In this document: positions 49,540 to 64,000 of the stretch, piece after piece
Numbering within the stretch: the first letter of the stretch is position 1
Layout of the letters: the number at the start of each line of letters is the position of its first letter
Assembly (NCBI RefSeq): GCF_000150275.1
Contig: NW_002060947.1
Span: 1,849,740 to 1,913,739 of the forward strand
Length of the DNA stretch: 64,000 bases
Source of the DNA: Trichoplax adhaerens
Taxonomy: Eukaryota > Animalia > Placozoa
Direction of reading: 5' to 3'
Made by a program: the position numbers and the translations under genes
The notes under the pieces: model-generated
Told to the model about the DNA's origin: nothing
Seen by the model: the letters and a program-made list of their open reading frames with translations, nothing else
Database searches by the model: none

Positions 49540-52500
49540 AATGTCATTTTTAATTCTACGCTATGATCTCGTCGTTGTTTATCATGACAAAATCAGCTTA
49601 GCCTTTATGATACCTACAAATTGCGATGGTTTAATTTTAAGATATCAATATTATCTAATTAATTGACTATTAATCAAATAAATTATCGGTAACGACGTCT
49701 TGACTACTTACTATCATCTCCCCAGTGGGATATAAGGGGAAATTATTGGACGCTTCATCAAGGCTATGGAATGCAATTTTCTGATTAATATTACAGTCTA
49801 TGTTATCAAGATCAAATACAGGCAATAAATGGCTTTGATAAATTGTTACTGTCATGGAAATAAAATTGACATTTTTAATGGGTAATAGTACACTTCGATA
49901 TATACCTATTTAATATAGTACGTTCGAGAACATTTATTATGGCGTCTCTATGATGATAAGATATTGACATTATTTTAAAGAAAAATGATATTAATAATAC
50001 GTTATAAATAAACTGGAAGATGACATGGTCATGTCTTATTTTAATATATAGTTACAAAATAGCATTGATATTTCAAGACATGACCATATTAATGAGTATG
50101 GTCGATTTTTTTATTTCAGTATTAAATAGATATATTATCAAATGTGGAACAAAAAAATTACGGCTGCTGATGATTTTGTTTTACTCGTTCAGTTTGTCCT
50201 TTTTATCCGAACTGTTGACATTGCCTCAATAGCTATTGATACATAGTTATATTGTCATTGGCGGCTATTCGATGATTAAACTAAGGTTACAATTGCATTT
50301 CCTTGATTTTGACACCTATTGTAAGCTATTCTATGGAGAAAGAGGATATTGTAACATATTTGATGAAGTCGTGACTTAATTTTGGTCAAAATATTGAGTA
50401 ACCGCTACGATCCACTTTTGGAAACTATAGCTGTCAAATTTAATTGACGTAAAAATCAATCGATTCTTTTTCCCCGCATTATTATTATTATTTTTTTAAT
50501 CTATCAAAACCCGTCGTCTATATCTTGTTCTTGTTGAATGTCTAGAAAATAATAAAAACAGCGAATGAATTTATTCTGACTGGATAAAAGTCTAAAAATT
50601 TAAAATTTTGATTTTGATGAGCATTATTGTTATAGTAGGAGGGCATTGACGATGTAATCTGATATTAATCAATTTGAAGCTCCAATTTTGTATCAATTCT
50701 TTTTAAATTGTCATGATGACCTGGATGGCTTTGATATTTCAATCTCACGATGATCAACAGCAATGATAGAGTAAAGGCTACTATAAATAATTTTATATGT
50801 AAAATTAACATTATTAAAACAACAATGTCAAAGTTTTCTTCCTCTTGATAATCGTTCCGACTGCAATTCTTACATATTGTTGATGTTATTGTCATGATGA
50901 TAATTAAAATCAATTGATACTGTTTCATTCCATATTTATATTCTATTTTATCACCATTACTATTTATTGATCATGTATTATGTAATTGAATATTAGCCTA
51001 TTCCTTGACGTAAATTTACCGCTGAGGACTATATTAACAGCAAGATAACAACAACATAATTGTCAGATTGTGCGATTAAAATTAATTTAATACGAACTTT
51101 TATCAGAATTAAAGCTATATTTTTATTTGAAAACAGTCTTAACTATTCCTTTCCAGTGTTTTATAGCTCTCAATCCTATCCATATCCTATACTTATACAA
51201 ATATTTTATCGCTAGATCGGTAATTTTTTTATCTCCTTATTATTACTTTGGTATTGCTAGATCTTAATGATGTTGCTTGCCACTCGTTATCGTCATAATA
51301 CGATATAAGACAACGTCATGACTGAGGTTGGCGATGATCAAAAGCTAGCTTTGATAAGTGTCCTCGTCGAGGAATACTTAAAATCATCACTTTTTTATCT
51401 GACCATTATCATATCATCGGGAATGTTATTAACGTCAACGGATATATCCATGAATAAAATATAGAAAGCAAGCGAATCGTCATTATGTGATTTTATAGTT
51501 ATAGCTAATATAATGACTAGTTCATTTCGTTCCAAGAAAAATTAATATTCTATCTTATAAAGCTACTTTACAAGTATAGAATAGATCGAGAGTATCTATA
51601 ATGACGTCTTCATTTTATACTATATGGGATAGGATAATGATGCATAACATAGTACTGCCAACGAGTACTTTTTTTTACAGCATCTTATCTGCATTATTTA
51701 ATCGACTCATGATGAATTACAAGTTGGCGAGAACGAATAGCAAGAAAGTGTTATGGCAGTAACATTTACCTGCATGCTATATATATTGCTATCATCATTT
51801 GAATTGATAATATCAGATTAGTTGTATTTGCTTTGATATGATATTGAGCTAAATTGCATGAAATAGAGTATCATATGGATGGAAAGATGATTAGCTATCG
51901 TCATACTATTAAAATGAGCTCATCATTCAAGGTAATTCAATTAATTTAGCCTGCAATGTTTATTTTAATTGTTTGTATGCCAACTTGAATGCAGACAGAG
52001 TGGAGTCTTTTGAATGTTTATCAAACTAACAAATTATCCAGATAAATTAGATTAATGTTCAAGATTGGAAGAATTGATTTTGTCGTTTAAAATGAATTTA
52101 TAGAGATTTATAAATTGCTCTATTGTTATCCATTCTGCAAATCCATTGATTTAAATGTAGTCTATCTAGATAGATCAGAGTTGATTCCATTCTATTCTAT
52201 TCAATCAAAAGCTAATTTATCTATTTATGATAGATGATATTTCTTCTCAAAAGTAGATAGTGATTTTTTTGATATATTTTTGTTGTTGATTTATTTTCCT
52301 CTCTCTCCCTCTCTCTCTTTCTCTTTACTCCATATCTTCCTTTCTACTCTCTAAGTGATGATCGATAAGTAGATGATGATCCATTTTGTCATGCTTTAAC
52401 TTCCCTCCCAGTATTATCATTTTTATTCATTGATTATAAGTAATGTATAAATACTGCTTACTGTTGATTATAATACGAGTGCATGGGTGGAGTATATGCA

Positions 52501-52900
52501 GTAAGAGAGTGAGAGGGGGTTGAATTGTTTATTCATCTTTTACATTAAATCAAAATAATGTGCCGGTAGGGAGGAGATTGTAAAAGACATTTTGCCCATT
52601 GATTCTTTTATTAAATTATTTGGTACAAAAGTCAAGCCAACCCCTTAACCAGGATAAAATAACAAAAATTGATGAATTTCAATAGGATCTAAGAAAGAAG
52701 CCTTGCATCGATATTAGACCTTGTTGTAACTTCAATCTTATTACGGATGTCATCATCAATCGACACTAGGAAGAGAATGTAATTCGAGTTACCAAAATGT
52801 TTTTTGATCTTTCTTATTATTTTATCATTTCATTTAATTACATAATTACACGTGATTTATTAGCACAATATCAATTATCATGCAATTCAATCAAAGGATC
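49540..52900. promoter_or_regulatory. Candidate Brachyury upstream cis-regulatory region (TCF/LEF sites, TGACA cluster, CT/GA tract at ~52298-52335)
   Basis: CTTTGAT/ATCAAAG at 49833, 50729, 51349, 51831 and 52890; 14 TGACA/TGTCA in 49542-51065. Function inferred only. Confidence 0.4.
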
Positions 52901-53599
52901 TCTCGGATACTTATACTGTGTACATAACCTTAATATAAATTAAACTACCGTGATAAATTCCAGTTGCTAATTTACTTTCCATCATAACGCACTACCCGGA
53001 TTGATCATCCACTTCACTTGATAGCTTCATTAATTCATACTATTGAGAGAAGAAAAATTGACTCCTCATTTTTTTCAATTGAAACTATTTCTAGCTGTCA
53101 ATTCTATCTTGAACGATTTACTACTTGGCTTGTATCCACTTGAGTTTGAAATCTTTTAATCTTAAATTATTCATTAGCCAGATATCCAATTGGAATTGCT
53201 TGGCCTAAAAGCTGTTCAGGGCCACCACACAGGTTGTAACGCTTATCCATGGAGAATAATAATTATTTTATTTCATCGACTTAATATAGATCGATTTCAT
53301 TTCAATTTTAGCCGTAAATCATGATTAGATTGATAATCGATCGGGCTATAGAGCTCTATAGCTTACCTTGTTTTTCATTGCATCTATTTTTTTTCTTTCT
53401 ATGTTAATCATTTTAACGTAGAAAATAAGACATAACTCATGATTTTGTTACTCGCTTTTTCTCACTCTTACTCTGGCTGATAATCATTTTTATGAAATGA
53501 TAATTTACACCATTTGTTTTTTTTCTCTTCCTATCTCCTCTATGAATTCTCCACTCCAAATCAAGCGCTTGATAAGTCTTAACCAGTCGTTGCTTGTGA

Positions 53600-56500
53600 A
53601 TGTCAAATCAAATAATGAAATCAACTTCGTCCTTTTCTGTCACTAATTTATTGTCGGCTAGCGAAAATGATGTCAGTAATCAATCGTCTGATGATGAAAA
53701 ACAACCTAGTTTGATGGCGAATCATAGTCACACCAATGGAGCAACAACAATGGCGACAGCTGCTGCAGTTGCTGCAGTTGCTGCAGCTGCAAATGCGAAT
53801 GGTGGTAGTAATCATCGTCATCATGTTAACGCTACAAACACAAGCCATAAAAAGGGTGCTGCTACTTCCACCACACCAGCATCCAATAATCGTAATCAAA
53901 ATATCGATTCCGATGCTAATGTTAAAGTCAATTTGTTAGATATCGATTTATGGAAACGATTTCGAAAATTAACCAACGAAATGATCGTAAGTACAAAATC
54001 AATCTAGGGATTATTGGACACAGATTCAATGATCCAGTGGTTATCATTCCTGTTGCATGCATAGAATAGCCTCGATCTCTGCACACATAGGGGGGAAAAA
54101 AATTCATATAGCAATAATCAATATTTAATGCGCGTGGATCAAGTTTTATTTTTTATATCGTATATCTTAATTACTTTATCTAATCAGTCGTCGTTCATGT
54201 AACTTAGTTGTCATGGTAGGACAGAAACAAGTTGAAAATTATGTTTTACTATCAATTTTCTTTTTTTCTTTTTGATGCAGTCAATACCTTATTTTGAAGG
54301 CCTTATTAATAATTTTATTTCTTCAAATCATGATTGATTGATTGATTGATAGTATAGAATGAAATGCGCTACATTTTTCCAATCATTTCTGTACATTACA
54401 TTATTGACCTGATCTTATACAGTGTAGATACAAATTGATCTTCGACCAAGCGTCTCCTGATGCCCCCCATCGGCACTTCGAACCCATCTACGGATTTAAC
54501 ACATTCAAATGATAGACAGTAAAATTGAATCTCGACCAGACACTAAATTACGGGGAGTGCATAAATTTAAATTAGATTAAATTACCATAAAGAATGCTTG
54601 ATATTGATTTTCCCAAAGAAACGGAGTTTCTTTCTATCTCATTTATACTTTAAACTGTTGGTAGTAGTCGTAGAGCCAATAATGTTCATCGTTATTGACT
54701 TTCTATTCGTATATTGAAGTGAATTGTCAGAAGGAAAGAGTACTATGGCTTCAAATTCAACTCGATTGAACGTAAACAGCAGGAATTTCCTTCTAGACAT
54801 TTTACTTGTAAGCAACATTCGTGTTATATCCTCTTATGGACAAACAAGTCATACCCTGCCTCGAGAGCGATAGTGAAAAGATATTGATGTAAAGACTGAA
54901 ATTTTACCATACTACTCTTCTACTTTATAGTAAGATAATCCGATCCGTTTAGAAATGGATTTTGTGGCCAAGCTGGCCTATGATCTTTTTTGATCCTTAA
55001 TTAATTGAGCCTAACATGCTTGGCATGCAGATTAAAATGGTCAAATATTTTTCCAAGATCTATTCGGTAATCTACTTAGAAGGGAGAAAAGTTGCATATG
55101 AATAGTCCATGAAAATGGATACTATTGTGGTCAATACAAGTAACAATTTCTTCTTTCGCTATCTATTTCCTGCCGTATAAAGATAATTGAGCAGGCAATA
55201 AAATAGAATTGATGAAGTTCTTAATGCCTGAAGGCGTCATGTTATCCTCTGCCAACTTACTCTATATACCATATTGCATTATAAGTCAATGATTGCGATA
55301 ATGAAAGGAATTGGCCACAAGAGAATAAATAGCAAGGGTAGAGATTAAAACAATTCAATCAGGATAGATAAAAGATTACTCAATAATTGGTCTATAGCTT
55401 CCCATTTCTTAATTATATTCATACCCTGAAACAGACGTTGCTAAGGGATTTGAAAAAGGAGGAAGGGATCGCAAAATATTCATGCTAAGATACAACGTTT
55501 TACCAGCTTGAACGATGAGTTACCAGCTGAATGATGAATTTAAAAAGCAGTCTATTTTAATTTTTTATTTGTCGAGCGAGGGAGCTAAAGTAATCCTTTG
55601 CTTTTTAAAGAAATCTTATCGAGATTCGATCTTAATCTTTTTATTCCAGCTTATGTGATTATAGATAATCACCTTTAAGCAGGCAATTAGTCATCATCCG
55701 AAGCTTCCATCTTACATAGAATGAAAAGAATTATTCATCATCATTAATCACTTTTATCCTTTGCATTACGTTGGCTTAATTGATATGTCTTGCCAGACTT
55801 GAGAAAGAAAATTCCAATCTAGAACTCTAATTTTACATTACTTTACTAAAACATTAAGGATAGCTTTGATAGAATCCGTATTGCTAATGGGAAAGATAAC
55901 TATCAATCACCTAGATAGCGATAGCCAAAAATTCAATTACGTGACTTAATTAATGAATCAAAATTGACGACCATAATTGTTATTATTCTACTTACCATGA
56001 TATTCAAAAATGAGAGTCTGTCCTAGACAGAAAGGTAGGACGTTAACGGTTGTTTGGAGTCTGGACTGTAGTTCAAGGTATCAAGGTCATAAATGGATTA
56101 TAATTTTCCACTTCCAATGTAAAAGAATAGAAAGATAAAATTTATAGTTGTACAAATACAACGGTAAGAAATGCGTAGAAATTCTATCTATAGAGGAAAG
56201 TTTAATTAAAATTACATACTAAATTGAAACAATTAAGCCATCTATGGTCATACAAAGGTTTAACCGCCTTGAATCAAGTTTGTGTATTGTTTCATGCAGT
56301 AAGCTCAACATTGTCGATGTGGGCAATATTGTAATTAAATTAAAATTGTAACAATTGTATAATAGCCATTACTATGATTAGAGAGGGGAAAAAAGTTATT
56401 ATCCTCATTTCAATATCACTTAGTGGATCGAATTGAATTTGATCGAGCCAAAACGATAGTATCGGCCAAGCAGGGTTTCAATGATAGTTTATAAAATTGA

Positions 56501-59500
56501 TCATGATGGATGTTATGGGCTTGCGATCACCAATTAGCATTATTTCATAGGGCTAAGCACCCTTTTCGCGTTAAGGAATCTGTATTGATGTGCGCATGAG
56601 AAATAATATTCAAATTAGACCAAGAGCACAGGGAATATTTAGTATTTCCTAAATTATTTCATTTATTCAATTGATGCAAGTTCTATTCTTAATCAAAATT
56701 CATTTCCTTTCCAATTTCCGTATAGAGAAACATGAATAGATTGCCTTATGCGAAAATATCAAAATCACATTAATAATTAATCAAGGGAACATTCAATAGT
56801 CTCCAAATCATTTGATTATTAATTTGATGCAGGTTCCATTGCTAATCAAAATGGATGATTTATTACTGATTGACTTCTATAACTTTTAGACTTGTGCCTT
56901 TAGACGGTTCAAGACCTAAATCGAGTTTAATAGGGTAGACTAAAGAGAATCTTATCTACGTACAAAAAGGATTATAGTCATAGCTAAGGCCAATTTCAAC
57001 TTACACCTTAAAAATTGAATAATTAAAAATATTAGGGAAGAAGATCTACTTGCTACTTTACTCCATTGTTTCCACATCACCGATGATAATTTAGGATCAT
57101 TGTCTAAGTGTAATATCATCTATCTGGCCTTCTATGTACACACTCTAGTCAAGAAATCGAATTTGCTGTCCCTATTTCGAGCTAAGCATAGTATTACTAG
57201 CAGCCGATTTTATTGCTAAAGTACGCTAGAACTAGATTAGGACTGTATTGATTTTATAACTTAATTTACGCCAGATCGGAATCTTAAGGAATAGTGAGTT
57301 AATCTCATCGCCTTATTTTTAATTTTGAATGCGGTCTATGCGATAAATACATCGACGAGATTCGATGGAATTCTAACGATTAATTTGTCAAAATTCTGTC
57401 TAAAGATGACACGGTCCAGCCGGTAAAATAGTGTACTTTAAGAAGACTGTTTTGTTTATCTTCTTGTCCATTTGATCATCATGCATGTCTTATATTTATC
57501 CATCCTGACCTAGGTGACTAACAACTGACTTTTAACTAAGACCCTATCTTTCTTAAAGGGGCCTTTCGAAATAAAATTGCTATCCATTCGGTAGAACAGT
57601 ACCATAATATTTCGCTACCGCATACAACTACCCCAATTGTAATTTTGAATACGTTATTACATCCAGATATTATTGATTTAATGCCATTCTCTAAGCGAAT
57701 TTATCATAGGAGAAGGAATACTGAAATCACTCCAGAGTGATTCTAAATACTAAATCCTTATTTAGAAAATGATTTTTATAATTAGACGCCCGCGCGACAA
57801 TATTTTAAAAGAAATAATCATGCAAAAGTCGCAATCGTTATGAAGGTTATCAATAGGAGAAAAGTTTAGTCATAGCTATTTTTCTCATTTATCTTGTAGA
57901 TGTTAGAGAAAACAGTAGGTTAAGATACTGTCTTGTTGAATTCGATAACAGTATCGGCGATAGTTAACAAATCCGATAGTCCAATGTATTATTATGAAAT
58001 ATTCAAGTATTTAGTCATGGATATTGATCAAGTTAAGAAATCAATAGGTTGTTTTGCATTGATTTCACCTGTCAATGTTTTATGAATTCATGAACAACAC
58101 TTTTTCTTATTTTTACTATAAGTTTATTTTTAGTATTCTTGGAATTGATGCTTTCCTATGATAGTACCGTAAATATCTAACGAGTACTTTTTCTTCTTTG
58201 CTTTCTGCCGCGCCATCATTTCTATGTCAAATGGATGGATATTCTAATCCTACTTAGGTGACCAAATCGGGCAGGTGAGTTCATTTATAGCATAGTAATA
58301 ATAATCGAATACAAGTCCATTCTATTCAAGTTGCAATACAATTGGTCTTCTTTCCTATTATTTCCTTATTATTATTTTCCAATAATTTAGTCGTACTTTT
58401 TTTCTATCATTTGACAAATTGCTAATTGCTACTCTTGGCGTTGAGTAATGATGTTATTAAAAAACTCGATGTCTTATTTTAGTATTGTTTTTCTTTTATA
58501 CAGCAATCTTACAGTAGATTACATCATAACAAAGTAGATCTTCAACATAACATTTACAGTAAATCGACCAGAAAGGTAGAATAACATTGCCAAAAGGATC
58601 AGATTTATTCTATCTTTATAATGTGGAAGTAAATAATTTCAATTTCAATTTCAATCCTTTGTAGCCACGTTTAGTATTGATACAAATGACAATATTGTAG
58701 AAAATTCACCTCTATTCCATAAGCTCTTTATTCCTTTAGTATCTAATTTGAATGCAAACCTATCACGATCTTGTGGTCATACAATGAATTGAAAATGATT
58801 TCATTTTTTCTATATTAAATTATTTTCTCTTCATCTAAACGACCATCTTAATAGTATTGCCAAGTAGGATTATATTAAGATATTGGAAGTAAAATTGGTC
58901 GTAGACTATTGTAACTATGACTTTAATGCCATTAAAACAGAGCAAGTAAATATCACACCGGTTTATTACAGGTCGATATCAATAAATCAAAGTAAAATGT
59001 ACCGTATTTAGTAGCCAAAATTGACGAATATTTAAGTTTGTCATATTAGTAAGTAAAATTTGAAGTAATTTTAAACTACTAATATTGAATAAATAAATAA
59101 AATTAATCTATAATTAATCATATTGAGATTATTCTTGCCGTTGATTTTAGTCTTAATACTGTAAGTTATTTTACTTTCATCGTTAATAAAATTAGTAAGC
59201 AAGTGGGTGGAATGGCACAGTATTTAAGCGAGGGTTTGCATCATAAGTTTTCCATCTATCGTTTAATGAAGTAAATCTTGCAATGCCAAATAATGTCCAT
59301 GCTTAAGTGTTCTATTTAATTTGCGATAGATGCAGTAACAGTTTCATTTTATGACAAGAGTAAATAAATCTCAGTGAGATTAAACTAGTACAAATGATGA
59401 TACAGTTTGTATGTTGGATATTATAGATGACCGTAGGTGTTAAACTGCTCTATTGTAATCTTTCGACTACATACCGCAGGAATTTTACGCTAGCAGATGT

Positions 59501-62500
59501 AGTAAGCAATCAATATTCGATATTGATGAAATTTAATAGCATTGCAAGTGTTGCTTTTATTAGTAATACTGATAAAGTTACTGAAGCCTTCAACGACTGC
59601 AATATTGAATATCAGTCTTAGCTTCATGCGTTTAACCATTCTAGCATTTAGATAGTTTATAATTTGCAAACTTTAATGTGTATTAATCACTGGATAGTGG
59701 TAACTTCCTGATCAAATTTTAATCCTATAGTAGGAGAATTTATGATAACTTTTTAATTGGAACATGATTATACCTACTCTTCATTTTCTTCAATGAAATA
59801 AGAAATCAATTATAGCATTATTACTGATATTATAACAAAAAGTGGATTGATTCATTATTTGCATTGCATTGAAGACAATGATTACTTCCAAGTTGCATCC
59901 AATACTAAATTTCATTTTTGTATGCTTAATGTATAACGGTCGCTATTAATTGCGCTATCGACAAGCAACAATCTCTATATTATGTAGCGATATTATTCAA
60001 TTAGTAAAATGGAATAGTAACAATTGTTTTCAATTCGTCTACTGATTAATTTCATAGAATAGCGTAATATTAAAAAGCTGAAATTTCTTGTAATATTACA
60101 AGATGAAATAATAATTACTGGTATTAGCTATATCAAATATGATCCAATATGATTAAGGATTACCATACAATCTTATCTCTTCATCTTATATGAATAACGT
60201 CGGCAAAATTGAACTCCATTTCACGATTTATTATTGCAATTACCGAGAAATGTGCGATATCTATATACGTTTTTTTAATTAAAGTCGATACTATAACTAT
60301 TGGAATCTTAAGATTATGCCTATGTCGCTTTTTAAGCCATTAGAAAATTTTATTACACCTTATTAAATAACCATTACTCGATTCAGGTTGAAATTCTTTC
60401 ACAGACATGAATAAGTCGCTGGATGACACATTCACTAATTATAGCTTTAAAAAGAGCTTAAAAACAATTAATTAGTTTACTTATAAAATTTGAAATCAGA
60501 AGCTACGTACAAGCAATATCGCCAATGATTTCCTTCAGCTGGTAGCCAATGTTTCAAATAAATTGTATAAATTGTTATAGGCAAAGTTTGAATTCATATG
60601 CAACTATTATCTTCAATCTATTGAAAAACTTCACCTGCTCAGTTTCGACTTTGACCTATATTTCACCATAATGACAGTGGATTATATTCATCAGATAGGC
60701 ATGATAATGTTGTTTTATAATATTACTATTGTCATAATGTATTGGATTAATCGTTATATCTTTTTCCTTTTCTAGACGAATGTTTCCTATACTCAAAGTT
60801 CAAATAAGTGGTCTCGATCCCCATGCAATGTATTCATTCTTGTTAGACTTTGTAGCCGCTGATAATCATCGTTGGAAATATGTTAATGGTGAATGGATTC
60901 CTGGTGGTAAGCCGGAACCTGCACCACCAAGTTTCGTTTACATCCATCCAGATTCACCTAATTTTGGATCGCATTGGATGAAACAACCAGTTTCATTTTC
61001 GAAAGTAAAATTAACCAATAAATCAAATGGCGGCGGCCAGGTTGGTTTATATAATATCATCTTCTACTAATGTGATGACAACTTTTGATTGCCATCCTAT
61101 AAAATTAGAGATCGAAGCAAATGTAGATTAGATTACGCCTTGTTCATACTAGGACTAGGGATGTTTTATTATTCAATTTGCTGGGTGCTCGCTCTGTACT
61201 ATATGGATCGGTCCTTTTTTTCTAGCCCTTCTACACAATCAATATTTTGTTTTCATATACTGATAAAACCGAAAAAATTCGTAGATATCCGTCGTCAATA
61301 AATACACAAAGATTAACAATTCCCTAATATTGAACAACTCGATATGCGCAACGATTTTTGGTTGCATTGAACGATTTTTATCTATTGAATTTTTATCCAC
61401 CATCCTAAAGTTGCAATTTTAATGCCAGCTGACATGAAAACAAAGGCTACTATTACGGATTTTACGTAGTTCAATTATTGTCTTTGCTATTTGTGTAAGT
61501 AATGTGCAATTACCAAAGTCAATTAATATATCATCGACCCTGATAATTTCATTACTGACATGAAATCGCTCTTAGGCGCTTTCTTTTCAACGATTTAATA
61601 ACCTTTAAACGAAATTTAAAACTGTCCAATTGACTTCATTTGTTTCAATAGTCATTTATTAAAGATTGGTTATTATTTACTCCACTTTATTTAGCATTTA
61701 ATTCTGTCAGTAGAATCAGTCCTTTTCGTTACTGCCGTTTGTTTCTAGATTTTTCCAGAAAGATAAATGATGAATTCAGAGAAAAGGTTAATTTGTACGG
61801 TCTAAGAGATAATCGATCTGCATTAATTTATTTATTCGAAAATGATTCACACTAAATTAACAAGAAATTATTTTCCATTCGCTCGACGTTTTCTACTAAC
61901 TATTTCGTTTTATGGGCGTATATTATATTCAGAGGACGTAGTTCTAAAAGCCAATGCAGTCATTACACTACTATGCCTATAACCAATGCTATGTAACTGT
62001 AAAATTATATCAAAATATTCAAAGTAAAAAATTGAATTTTTGAGTTATAGGTTACTATAATAGATATGATAAGTATTATCTCCGGTATACGTACGTTTTC
62101 TTTTGTAAAATTATGCCTTGCGGCAATATTGTCTATGATATATTCTGCCAATGTGGTATATTGCAGAATAATAGACATGATACTTTCATTTTACATCTAA
62201 AATGCTACATCACTAAATTATCTAGATTTTGTTAAACAATTTATTTATTCATGCCAGGAATTTAGATGGTTGTGTAGACATTTGCTAAATATATAATTCA
62301 GAGTCTCATTGTGATATCGTATTCGAATGACAAACTCTGTGATATGCATACCAATTTTAAGCGACTTACTTTCTTACTATTCGATTATATCATTTTTAAT
62401 TGTACATTGTCTATTGCTATTTACTCAAAACTAATTTGTAGAGAAAATCCTCACTCCGGATTTCTAACATTATTACCGATGCAGTAGATAGTAGGCACTG

Positions 62501-63973
62501 GTAAAAATGTTCACCTTTAAATGCGGTCGATTTATGATTTTGACTTAGAATAGAAATCCTTTGGCATTTGACAGCTATATACCGTATCGATTCTACGAGT
62601 ACAAATAAAAATGGAATTAAAAATTAGTTATATAACTTACAAATATCAGCCATCTATTAGCCCTTGAAACACCCAAATTCGATAGTAGCAGTTCATAATC
62701 TTTAGCATTTAACAACAGTACAACTCATCTTAATGCTTGAAGAGCATTAAGCACCAAACTGTATATTTCCAACTTGATCATATTGTAACTAGCTCGCATA
62801 TGTAAGCATACGAGTATCTTATCCGCAACACTTAAGATACAGCTTAGATCTGTTGTACTTCTATCACATATGTATCCATGCAAAATTTTTGAAGATATCT
62901 AACTTTAGTCCTTTGTTATTCGTTTATAATTTATTTTTTTTCTAATCAGGAATGTTTTATTTATTCGTAATCGACTTTTCACTCTGCACGTATTTCTTTC
63001 ACTTTAATTACTCAAGTGATTATTACCAAATTCTAATGATATCTTTTCTTGCGGCAAAGATTATGCTAAACTCATTGCATAAATATGAGCCTCGGCTGCA
63101 CATTGTTAAAGTTGGGTCATCTCCAGATTCCGATAAAACAATTACTGCTCATTCTTTCCCTGAAACTCAATTTATTGCGGTGACAGCCTACCAAAACGAA
63201 GAGGTATGTTAATTACTGATATTTCGAAATGACCAATCATTTCCCTTATCGCCATGCTCCTTATGCCTGATTTCAACTAATGAATGCTAGAAAGTGATAT
63301 TAATTTATTAACTATAAAGTAAAGCAGTCGAGATTACATTTGTGACGGGTATATTTCTGACCTGCTCGCCATTTTTAATACTGGTATTTTTATATAATTA
63401 AACTTTGAGCTATATAGTTACTAACCCTTCGATATTATTATTCCTTCAAGATTACCGCCTTAAAAATCAAGTATAATCCTTTCGCTAAAGCGTTCTTGGA
63501 TGCCAAGGAAAGGTAAATGACTGCCTAGTTAAATAATAAATTATTGCTATCTTGACTTCAGACTATTTATACTGCACAAGAGTTAAAAAAACTAATTATT
63601 GAATCTATTAATTAAAGTACCAGAAATAGATATTGTTATGGTGCCGTAGTAATCAGCGTCTTTGTAATCCTAATAACCACGGATAAACGAAAATTTCTTT
63701 AGCTAATTAAGCATATATATGTAGTGTAGATATAGTTTATGCGTATTTCTGAGCTTTAACATATAAAAATGTCTAGAATATATCTTGATTTGTCTAAATT
63801 TACATCTTATAAAACACAATAGACTTAGATCTTCCAAAGCTAATGCAGAACTACAAATATATTGTAGAAAATTTAAAAAAAGGGGAATTTTATTTCTATT
63901 AAAAATAGAGCTGAGCAAAAAGAAGCTGAAGAAAAGAGCCATGAATTGAGAGCACCTGCATATCCACCTCACT
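53600..63973 (+). CDS. TBXT: Brachyury (T) T-box transcription factor, 3'-incomplete. Exons 53600-53986, 58258-58274 (microexon), 60776-61040, 63060-63203, 63451-63512, 63909-63973
   Basis: [27 protein letters not shown]...[20 protein letters not shown]...[26 protein letters not shown]...[16 protein letters not shown]...[50 protein letters not shown] and AFLDAKER are Brachyury-subfamily diagnostic. Confidence 0.96.
58258..58274 (+). CDS. TBXT: 17-nt microexon of Brachyury encoding V-T-K-S-G-(R)
   Basis: ctaat (branch-like)...cctacttag|GTG ACC AAA TCG GGC AG|gtgagt. It supplies exactly the missing conserved residues and converts the phase-0 donor at 53986 to the phase-2 acceptor at 60776. Confidence 0.93.
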
Positions 63974-64000
63974 GTAAGAGAAAATTATAAAATTATATTC

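What the first reader, a model, noticed from the sequence alone, without database searches (positions are those of the whole stretch)
58258..58274. Hidden, frame-shifting 17-nt microexon inside the Brachyury T-box
Seen: exon 1 stops at EMI|gtaagt (phase 0) and the next large exon starts ag|A CGA ATG (phase 2), so the conserved VTKxGR is missing. A perfect 17-nt exon supplying it lies alone between introns of ~4.27 kb and ~2.5 kb, in a window where most introns are ~100 nt. Known: vertebrate TBXT encodes EMIVTKNGR in one exon with the intron after GR, so the EMI|VTK intron looks like an extra one. Skipping shifts the frame and reaches TGA about 29 codons into the next exon. Retaining intron 1 gives EMIVSTKSI*. 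Either product keeps the N-terminal eh1-like motif but has no DNA-binding domain. Inference: a potential splicing on/off (NMD or dominant-negative) switch for a key developmental regulator, and a likely gene-prediction failure point.
Basis: partly seen in the sequence, partly recalled or inferred. Interest (0 to 1): 0.85.

Follow-up and report, generated by a model that had tools for sequence, protein, structure and literature searches.

The report
Trichoplax Brachyury 17-nt coding microexon
The 17-base exon is real and needed to make the DNA-binding domain of the Trichoplax Brachyury gene, but public cDNA-derived and predicted proteins already contain it, and nothing here shows it works as a splicing switch.

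Summary
Exon 1 ends at 53986 (…EMI|gtaagt). A 17-nt exon lies at 58258-58274 (ag|GTGACCAAATCGGGCAG|gtgagt). The next exon starts at 60776. With the 17 nt included the product reads EMIVTKSGRRMFP. Skipping it reaches TGA at codon 29, and retaining intron 1 gives EMIVSTKSI*. The pattern occurs once in 64 kb and in 0 of 100 shuffles.

The genome appears to be Trichoplax adhaerens and the gene is Brachyury. The exon is not hidden. Three public proteins contain EMIVTKSGRRMFP:
- CAD70269.1, deposited as Trichoplax Brachyury and taken to be cDNA-derived
- XP_002112370.1, the model from this same scaffold
- RDD46743.1, the Trichoplax sp. H2 model

The EMI|VTK intron is an extra one:
- The four other T-box genes of this genome keep EM[IV]IT[KR]xGR in one exon.
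- So do 19 Brachyury-like genomic contigs from metagenomes.
- Two more divergent placozoan-like sequences also end exon 1 at EMI.

The most likely reading is an obligatory, mostly constitutive microexon made by a placozoan intron gain 17 nt upstream of the ancient GR|R intron.

The on/off switch idea could not be tested. I rate the switch at about 10%. The finding is of low interest and the exon is already annotated.

The parts
53600..53986 (+). Brachyury exon 1. It runs from ATG to ...[13 protein letters not shown], carries an N-terminal eh1-like motif (SFSVTNLL), and ends in phase 0 at ATC|GTAAGT.
   Evidence: tblastn of CAD70269.1 residues 1-133 is 98.5% identical. The eh1-like motif of Trichoplax T was already reported by Copley 2005 (PMC1310626).
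53987..58257 (+). Intron 1, 4271 nt, phase 0, between EMI and VTK. This is the lineage-specific extra intron.
   Evidence: Single copy in the genome, with no transposon copies. Absent from the paralogs and from other animals' Brachyury loci. The donor position is conserved in two other placozoan-like sequences.
58258..58274 (+). 17-nt coding microexon GTGACCAAATCGGGCAG. It encodes VTKSG plus the first two bases of the Arg codon.
   Evidence: The peptide VTKSGR is present in CAD70269.1, XP_002112370.1 and RDD46743.1.
58275..60775 (+). Intron 2, 2501 nt, phase 2, at GR|RMFP. This is the ancient T-box intron position.
   Evidence: The same position holds an intron in all four paralogs and in 19 metagenomic Brachyury-like loci.
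60776..61040 (+). Exon 3, 265 nt: (R)RMFPILKV...[11 protein letters not shown], the core of the T-box.
   Evidence: Pfam PF00907, E 6.5e-30, profile positions 27-110. 100% identical to P0001.
63060..63203 (+). Exon 4: [12 protein letters not shown]...AYQNEE.
   Evidence: Pfam PF00907, E 1.2e-15..
63451..63512 (+). Exon 5: [20 protein letters not shown](R).
63909..63973 (+). Exon 6: (R)[21 protein letters not shown]. The gene continues past the window end to about window-equivalent position 67445.

Best explanation
This is the Brachyury (T) gene of Trichoplax adhaerens. Its T-box is interrupted by two introns only 17 nt apart. One is the ancient phase-2 intron after ...GR, shared by the T-box family. 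The other is a phase-0 intron between EMI and VTK that arose in the placozoan lineage. The 17 nt left between them form an obligatory coding microexon. It must be spliced in to produce the T-domain. It is most likely included constitutively, or nearly so, helped by a near-perfect U1-complementary donor (CAG|GTGAGT) and a canonical acceptor.

Shown:
- the anatomy of the exons and introns
- the exon's presence in public protein records
- the absence of the extra intron from the paralogs and from the other animals sampled
- conservation of the exon-1 end in other placozoan-like sequences

Inferred:
- that inclusion is constitutive
- that the intron was gained rather than lost everywhere else
- that CAD70269.1 comes from cDNA
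For: - Anatomy and uniqueness.
- T-box and Brachyury identity: Pfam PF00907 on exons 3 and 4. Best named relatives are T/Brachyury/TBX19. The cluster holds 'Brachyury protein [Trichoplax adhaerens]' CAD70269.1 and XP_002112370.1. The latter lies on a contig of 8,573,113 bases, the same length as the window's contig.
- All three public proteins read EMIVTKSGRRMFP. CAD70269.1 belongs to the 2003 Martinelli & Spring work, cited in PMC1310626. By my own knowledge that work predates the 2008 genome, so a spliced 17-nt exon in it points to mRNA.
- Extra intron: four paralogs have EM[IV]IT[KR]xGR in one exon. Nineteen genomic metagenome loci have EMIVTKxGR followed at once by GT, and none of 80 loci shows a microexon pattern.
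- Age: P0153 and P0154 are 72-74% identical to exon 1 and 92% identical to each other. Both read ...NEMI-VST and then diverge, as expected for a conserved gtaagtac donor followed by intron.
- Splice signals: the microexon donor is the best of the six in the gene.
Against: - No read-level data were available, so the inclusion level is unknown.
- The microexon acceptor has a modest pyrimidine tract (13 of 23), against 20 of 23 for the downstream exon. Some skipping is therefore plausible.
- Both flanking introns are long for this genome, and a 17-nt exon is too short for ordinary exon definition. This is the setting in which regulated microexons are found in other animals.
- I could not read the 2003 paper, so the cDNA origin of CAD70269.1 rests on my knowledge and on its date.
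Confidence: 0.8

Rival explanations
1. Regulated switch. Inclusion of the 17-nt exon varies by cell type or condition. Skipping or intron-1 retention yields a transcript with a premature stop that is degraded by NMD. Alternatively it is translated into a short protein with the eh1 motif and no T-domain. Either way splicing would set the level of Brachyury activity.
For: - Skipping gives TGA at codon 29 of exon 3, upstream of at least four exon junctions. That fits the usual rule for an NMD target.
- The acceptor is weaker than the competing downstream acceptor.
- The flanking introns are long.
- The intron position is conserved in other placozoan-like sequences.
Against: - No skipped or alternative product was seen. 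The search with exon 1 (candidate length 71-226 aa) found no skip-isoform protein. The only three full-length relatives all include the exon.
- The donor is near-perfect.
- A frameshift on skipping is the default for about two thirds of exons and is no sign of regulation.
- There is no UGCAUG within 300 nt of the exon.
- The neural microexon programme of bilaterians depends on a protein domain not described outside them (my knowledge, not tested here).
Confidence: 0.1
2. Recursive-splicing intermediate. The exon begins with GT directly after its acceptor AG (ttag|GTGACC). After exon 1 is joined to it, a 5' splice site could be re-formed (ATC|GTGACC) and the 17 nt removed along with intron 2. 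The exon would then act as a stepping stone for removing 6.8 kb of intron.
For: The AG|GT juxtaposition at 58256-58259 and the long total intron length.
Against: - The re-formed site ATC|GTGACC lacks +5G and +6T and has a poor exonic side. The exon's own donor, CAG|GTGAGT, is far stronger.
- Removal would destroy the reading frame.
- Every known protein record keeps the 17 nt.
- The GT is simply the valine codon.
Confidence: 0.03
3. Chance match. The real mRNA obtains VTKxGR from elsewhere or lacks it.
For: None beyond the small size of the exon.
Against: It is the only candidate in the intron. It appears in 0 of 100 shuffles. The exact peptide is present in three public proteins.
Confidence: 0.01

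Closest known systems
Brachyury / TBXT genes of other animals (vertebrate-like and coral-like genomic contigs L013, L015, L017-L022, L026, L028, L031, L033 and others)
   Same: Same protein family and the same ancient phase-2 intron directly after ...VTKxGR. Exon 3 is 73-86% identical at protein level.
   Different: In those genes EMIVTKxGR sits at the end of one large first exon. Trichoplax has an added phase-0 intron after EMI, which leaves a 17-nt exon.
The four other T-box genes of the same genome (C1403 x2, C1413, C1392)
   Same: T-box genes with the intron after GR.
   Different: None has the EMI|VTK intron, and their GR|R introns run from about 170 nt to 2.9 kb.
T-box genes on metagenome contigs L060-L069 and L072 (possibly rotifer-like; the organism is not established)
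   Same: They carry an intron next to the same site...NEM-AT|gt...ag|T/A-GTG ACN AAA GCN GGN CGN CGA ATG.
   Different: - Their intron lies 1 nt upstream, in phase 2 inside the Ile codon.
- It is only 51-66 nt long.
- These genes lack the GR|R intron, so VTKAGRRMFP is continuous and there is no microexon.
- This looks like an independent event.
Constitutive coding microexons, and the regulated neural microexons of bilaterians
   Same: Very short (under 30 nt), frame-critical, flanked by long introns and canonical sites.
   Different: No evidence of regulation was found here. No UGCAUG lies nearby. The nearest upstream UGC triplets lie 52-59 nt before the acceptor. Whether placozoans have any microexon-specific regulator was not tested.

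Membership tests
T-box family, Brachyury (T) subfamily | T-box DNA-binding domain (Pfam PF00907) | tested here: met
   Exon 3 scores E 6.5e-30 on profile positions 27-110. Exon 4 scores E 1.2e-15 on positions 114-166.
T-box family, Brachyury (T) subfamily | Closest named relatives are Brachyury/T rather than other Tbx classes | tested here: met
   The 90% cluster contains 'Brachyury protein [Trichoplax adhaerens]' CAD70269.1. The next named hits are T, T-related and TBX19. No phylogenetic tree was built.
Coding microexon | Internal exon of 30 nt or less with canonical AG/GT sites that restores the reading frame | tested here: met
   17 nt, ttag|...|gtgagt. It is the only frame-restoring candidate that encodes the conserved motif.
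Coding microexon | Present in mature mRNA | tested here: inconclusive
   The peptide is present in CAD70269.1, a 2003 pre-genome record taken to be cDNA-derived, and in two gene models.
Alternative-splicing/NMD switch exon | Both inclusion and skipping isoforms observed, with variable ratio | not testable with these tools
No skip-isoform protein is in the collection, which is weak negative evidence.
Alternative-splicing/NMD switch exon | The non-productive isoform carries a premature stop more than 50 nt upstream of a later exon junction | tested here: met
   TGA at codon 29 of exon 3, near window position 60860, with junctions at 61040, 63203, 63512 and 63973 downstream. This is true of most out-of-frame exons and does not discriminate.
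Alternative-splicing/NMD switch exon | Unusually conserved intronic flanks across species | not testable with these tools
   Genomic DNA of other placozoans could not be fetched. Only the exon-1 donor region (VST = gtaagtac) is seen to be conserved.
Recursive-splicing exon | A strong 5' splice site is re-formed at the exon start after the first splicing step | tested here: not met
   The re-formed site ATC|GTGACC is weak compared with the exon's own CAG|GTGAGT.

The most novel reading that the evidence does not exclude
The 17-nt exon is a placozoan-wide, regulated gate on Brachyury. Cells that transcribe the gene would decide by inclusion or skipping whether a T-domain protein is made. Skipped transcripts would be removed by NMD or would give a short eh1-only protein. 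This would be post-transcriptional control of a key body-plan regulator in an animal with very few cell types and without the bilaterian microexon machinery.
Probability: 0.08. Interest if true: 0.55.

Novelty: already known. Interest (0 to 1): 0.2.

Why it matters
As it stands it matters little. The exon is part of the deposited Brachyury protein and of the public gene models, so no annotation is corrected at this point.

The comparative result is a small but clean example of a lineage-specific intron gain inside one of the most conserved motifs of the T-box. It leaves a 17-nt exon that has been kept in divergent placozoan-like lineages. It could serve as a rare-genomic-change marker for Placozoa. 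It is also a test case for how a genome with mostly short introns recognises a tiny exon between kilobase introns.

Only if inclusion proved to be regulated would it bear on how Brachyury activity is controlled in early-branching animals.

Tried and rejected
- **Genomic contigs of the H2 and other placozoan proteins.** Microexon and flank conservation in other placozoans therefore remains unseen.
- **Transposon origin of the new intron.** Both introns are single copy in the genome, so there is no support.
- **Structured RNA or ncRNA in the introns.** No Rfam family reaches its gathering score in 52000-64000.
- **Long-range pairing.** Inverted repeats are short, AT-rich and no better than the background of 12 similar pairs. 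One of them, 58240-58255 with 58862-58877, covers the microexon acceptor. I did not pursue it.
- **Rbfox-type UGCAUG near the exon.** None lies within 300 nt.
- **Literature.** I found no paper on a T-box microexon or on Trichoplax Brachyury gene structure. Martinelli & Spring 2003 is not held.
- **Full-length Brachyury models from other placozoans.** None is in the collection in the length range searched.
- **Joined spliced model.** It was translated only inside a script to check the frame and was not sent to any search tool. Searches used single exons by reference or public protein ids.

Full report
**1. The observation**

Reading the sequence confirms every coordinate.
- Exon 1 ends ...ACC AAC GAA ATG ATC|GTAAGT at 53986, in phase 0.
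- A 17-nt segment, GTGACCAAATCGGGCAG, lies at 58258-58274. It sits between a canonical acceptor (ctacttag|) and a near-consensus donor (|gtgagt).
- The next large exon starts at 60776 (ttttctag|A CGA ATG TTT CCT).

A script that joined the exons gave ...[34 protein letters not shown]....
- Skipping gives EMI followed by 28 out-of-frame residues and then TGA, which is codon 29.
- Retaining intron 1 gives EMIVSTKSI* (the ORF 53600..54007).

The exon is not a chance match. Among 264 stop-free, frame-restoring AG..GT/GC candidates in the 6.8 kb between exon 1 and exon 3, it is the only one that encodes [VIL]T[KR]xGR. A degenerate DNA pattern for 'AG-V/I T K/R x G (R)-GT' occurs once in the 64-kb window, and in none of 100 shuffles.

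**2. What the gene is**

Exons 3 and 4 match Pfam T-box PF00907 (E 6.5e-30 and 1.2e-15).

The window lies on contig C1410 (8,573,113 bases) of a 105.6-Mb assembly in 1414 contigs.

A search of 1.84 billion representative proteins with exon 3 returned a 100%-identical hit, P0001. Its 90% cluster has three members:
- RDD46743.1, 'Brachyury protein-like protein 1 [Trichoplax sp. H2]'
- XP_002112370.1 / TRIADDRAFT_25521 of Trichoplax adhaerens, seen on a contig of exactly 8,573,113 bases
- CAD70269.1, 'Brachyury protein [Trichoplax adhaerens]' (UniProt Q7YTV8)

The window is therefore the T. adhaerens Brachyury locus. The next named relatives are T, T-related and TBX19 proteins.

Mapping CAD70269.1 back to the genome gives exons at 53600-53986, 58258-58274, 60776-61040, 63060-63203, 63451-63512 and 63909-63973. 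Further exons lie beyond the window end, up to about window-equivalent 67445. The introns are 4271, 2501, 2019, 247 and 396 nt.

**3. The exon is not hidden**

All three public proteins read EMIVTKSGRRMFP. CAD70269.1 is the protein of Martinelli & Spring 2003, which Copley 2005 (PMC1310626) cites as the source of the Trichoplax T orthologue. By my own knowledge that work predates the 2008 genome. A correctly spliced 17-nt exon in that record is therefore best explained by cDNA. I could not read the paper itself, so I mark this step as inferred.

The gene model from this very scaffold also contains the exon. That model is truncated (242 aa, starting at MATAAAV and ending at DAKER), but the failure is not at the microexon.

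**4. Is the EMI|VTK intron extra?**

Yes, as far as could be sampled.

*Paralogs.* A six-frame Pfam search of the whole assembly found five T-box loci. In the four paralogs the motif is continuous in one exon and is followed by an intron exactly after GR: EMIITKQGR, EMVITRSGR, EMIITRIGR and EMIITKAGR.

*Other animals.* A scan of JGI metagenome contigs with exon 3 returned 80 loci carrying animal T-box exons.
- In 19 genomic loci the upstream exon was on the contig. There EMIVTK[NS]GR is continuous and is followed directly by GT (AG|GTAAGC, AG|GTGAGT and similar). The intron before RMFP ranges from 75 nt to 5.7 kb.
- Seven short contigs, probably transcripts, carry the motif fused to RMFP.
- Three long contigs (L044, L047, L048) also carry it fused, and so have no intron at either position.
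- None of the 80 loci shows a microexon pattern.

*A near-miss group.* Loci L060-L069 and L072 do have an intron beside this site. However, it lies one nucleotide upstream (...GAA ATG AT|gt...ag|T GTG ACG AAA..., phase 2). It is only 51-66 nt long, and these genes lack the GR|R intron, so no microexon results. This looks like an independent event, not the same intron.

**5. Age of the intron**

A search with exon 1 alone found two unnamed proteins, P0153 (ENA) and P0154 (Logan). They are 72-74% identical to exon 1, including the eh1-like motif, and 92% identical to each other.

Both read ...[10 protein letters not shown] and then diverge completely from each other and from the window before hitting stops. 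V-S-T is what the donor gtaagtac encodes. These are therefore read-through ORFs from genomic contigs of two more divergent placozoan-like organisms, in which exon 1 also ends at EMI.

The intron thus predates the split between those lineages and Trichoplax. The taxonomic assignment is inferred from similarity.

**6. Origin and mechanism**

- Both introns are single copy in the genome, so there is no sign of a transposon-derived intron.
- No Rfam family matches the region.
- The short inverted repeats in the region are at background level.

The splice signals are as follows.

| Site | Sequence or measure | Comment |
|---|---|---|
| Microexon donor | CAG\|GTGAGT | Best of the six donors in the gene |
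| Exon-1 donor | ATC\|GTAAGT | Perfect on the intron side |
| Microexon acceptor | 13 of 23 pyrimidines | Ordinary |
| Exon-3 acceptor | 20 of 23 pyrimidines | Stronger than the microexon's |

My reading is that this is an obligatory microexon. It is recognised mainly through its strong donor and by being transcribed 2.5 kb ahead of the competing acceptor. It is included in most or all transcripts.

The exon starts with GT right after AG, which formally resembles a recursive splice site. However, the re-formed site ATC|GTGACC is weak, and using it would destroy the frame.

**7. The switch hypothesis**

It is not excluded, but nothing supports it.
- A frameshift and a premature stop on skipping are the default for any exon whose length is not a multiple of three. 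The 265-nt exon 3 behaves the same way.
- No skip-isoform protein is present in the 15-billion-protein collection in the length range searched. This is only weak evidence, because Brachyury is probably too poorly expressed to be assembled.
- There is no UGCAUG within 300 nt.

The decisive test is junction counts in RNA-seq. No place was named as human-like, so the later searches used exon references as usual.

**8. Verdict**

The feature is an ordinary, already annotated coding microexon of a known gene. The regulatory interpretation is unsupported speculation, at about 10%.

The small new point is that the intron creating the microexon seems specific to, and conserved within, placozoans.

The joined spliced model was only translated in a local script and was not sent to any search tool.

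Noticed in passing
window 26000-52000: About 25 kb upstream of Brachyury has uniformly low GC (0.27-0.31, against 0.32-0.42 in the first 26 kb). It may be a gene-poor regulatory landscape of the kind often found next to developmental regulators.
   Followed up: no
beyond the window end, window-equivalent 66965-67445 (L093): Residues 375-463 and 464-534 of the deposited Brachyury protein CAD70269.1 both map at 100% identity, but in adjacent frames. The record and this genome therefore differ by a 1-nt indel. The last 71 residues of the 534-aa record look like out-of-frame translation. The H2 model ends differently, at 377 aa.
   Followed up: partly
window 53705-53707 and exon 3: The genome encodes [10 protein letters not shown] and [11 protein letters not shown]70269.1 has EKQPNLMANH and NFASHWMK, and the Trichoplax sp. 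H2 protein has N and G. The 2003 clone may therefore come from a slightly different strain, or it may contain errors.
   Followed up: no
G000:C1403:625092-628621 and 634289-635687 (L001, L002, L010, L011): Two T-box genes lie in tandem about 6 kb apart on contig C1403. The genome has five T-box loci in all.
   Followed up: no
L060-L069, L072 (metagenome contigs): These T-box genes have a 51-66-nt phase-2 intron inside the Ile codon of EMI, 1 nt from the Trichoplax position, and no GR|R intron. A second T-box gene about 2.5 kb upstream has the same intron position. The organism is unknown, possibly rotifer-like.
   Followed up: partly
L044, L047, L048 (metagenome contigs of 50 kb, 38.8 kb and 8.4 kb): Here EMIVTK[SG]GRRMFP is continuous, with no intron at either position, in long genomic contigs. 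Identity to exon 3 is 62%. They may come from non-animal holozoans or fungi that carry T-box genes.
   Followed up: no
L039, L084, L086, L088-L091: In these T-box loci the intron lies after ...GRRMFPV instead of after GR. This is another shifted intron position near the same motif.
   Followed up: no
window 54054-54063: TGCATGCATAG, which contains UGCAUG, lies about 68 nt downstream of the exon-1 donor. It is one of only two TGCATG sites in the two introns. This could be chance.
   Followed up: no
window 58240-58255 and 58862-58877: A 16-nt inverted repeat, 88% complementary, pairs the microexon's acceptor tract with a site 606 nt downstream. It is within the background of similar AT-rich pairs.
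   Followed up: no
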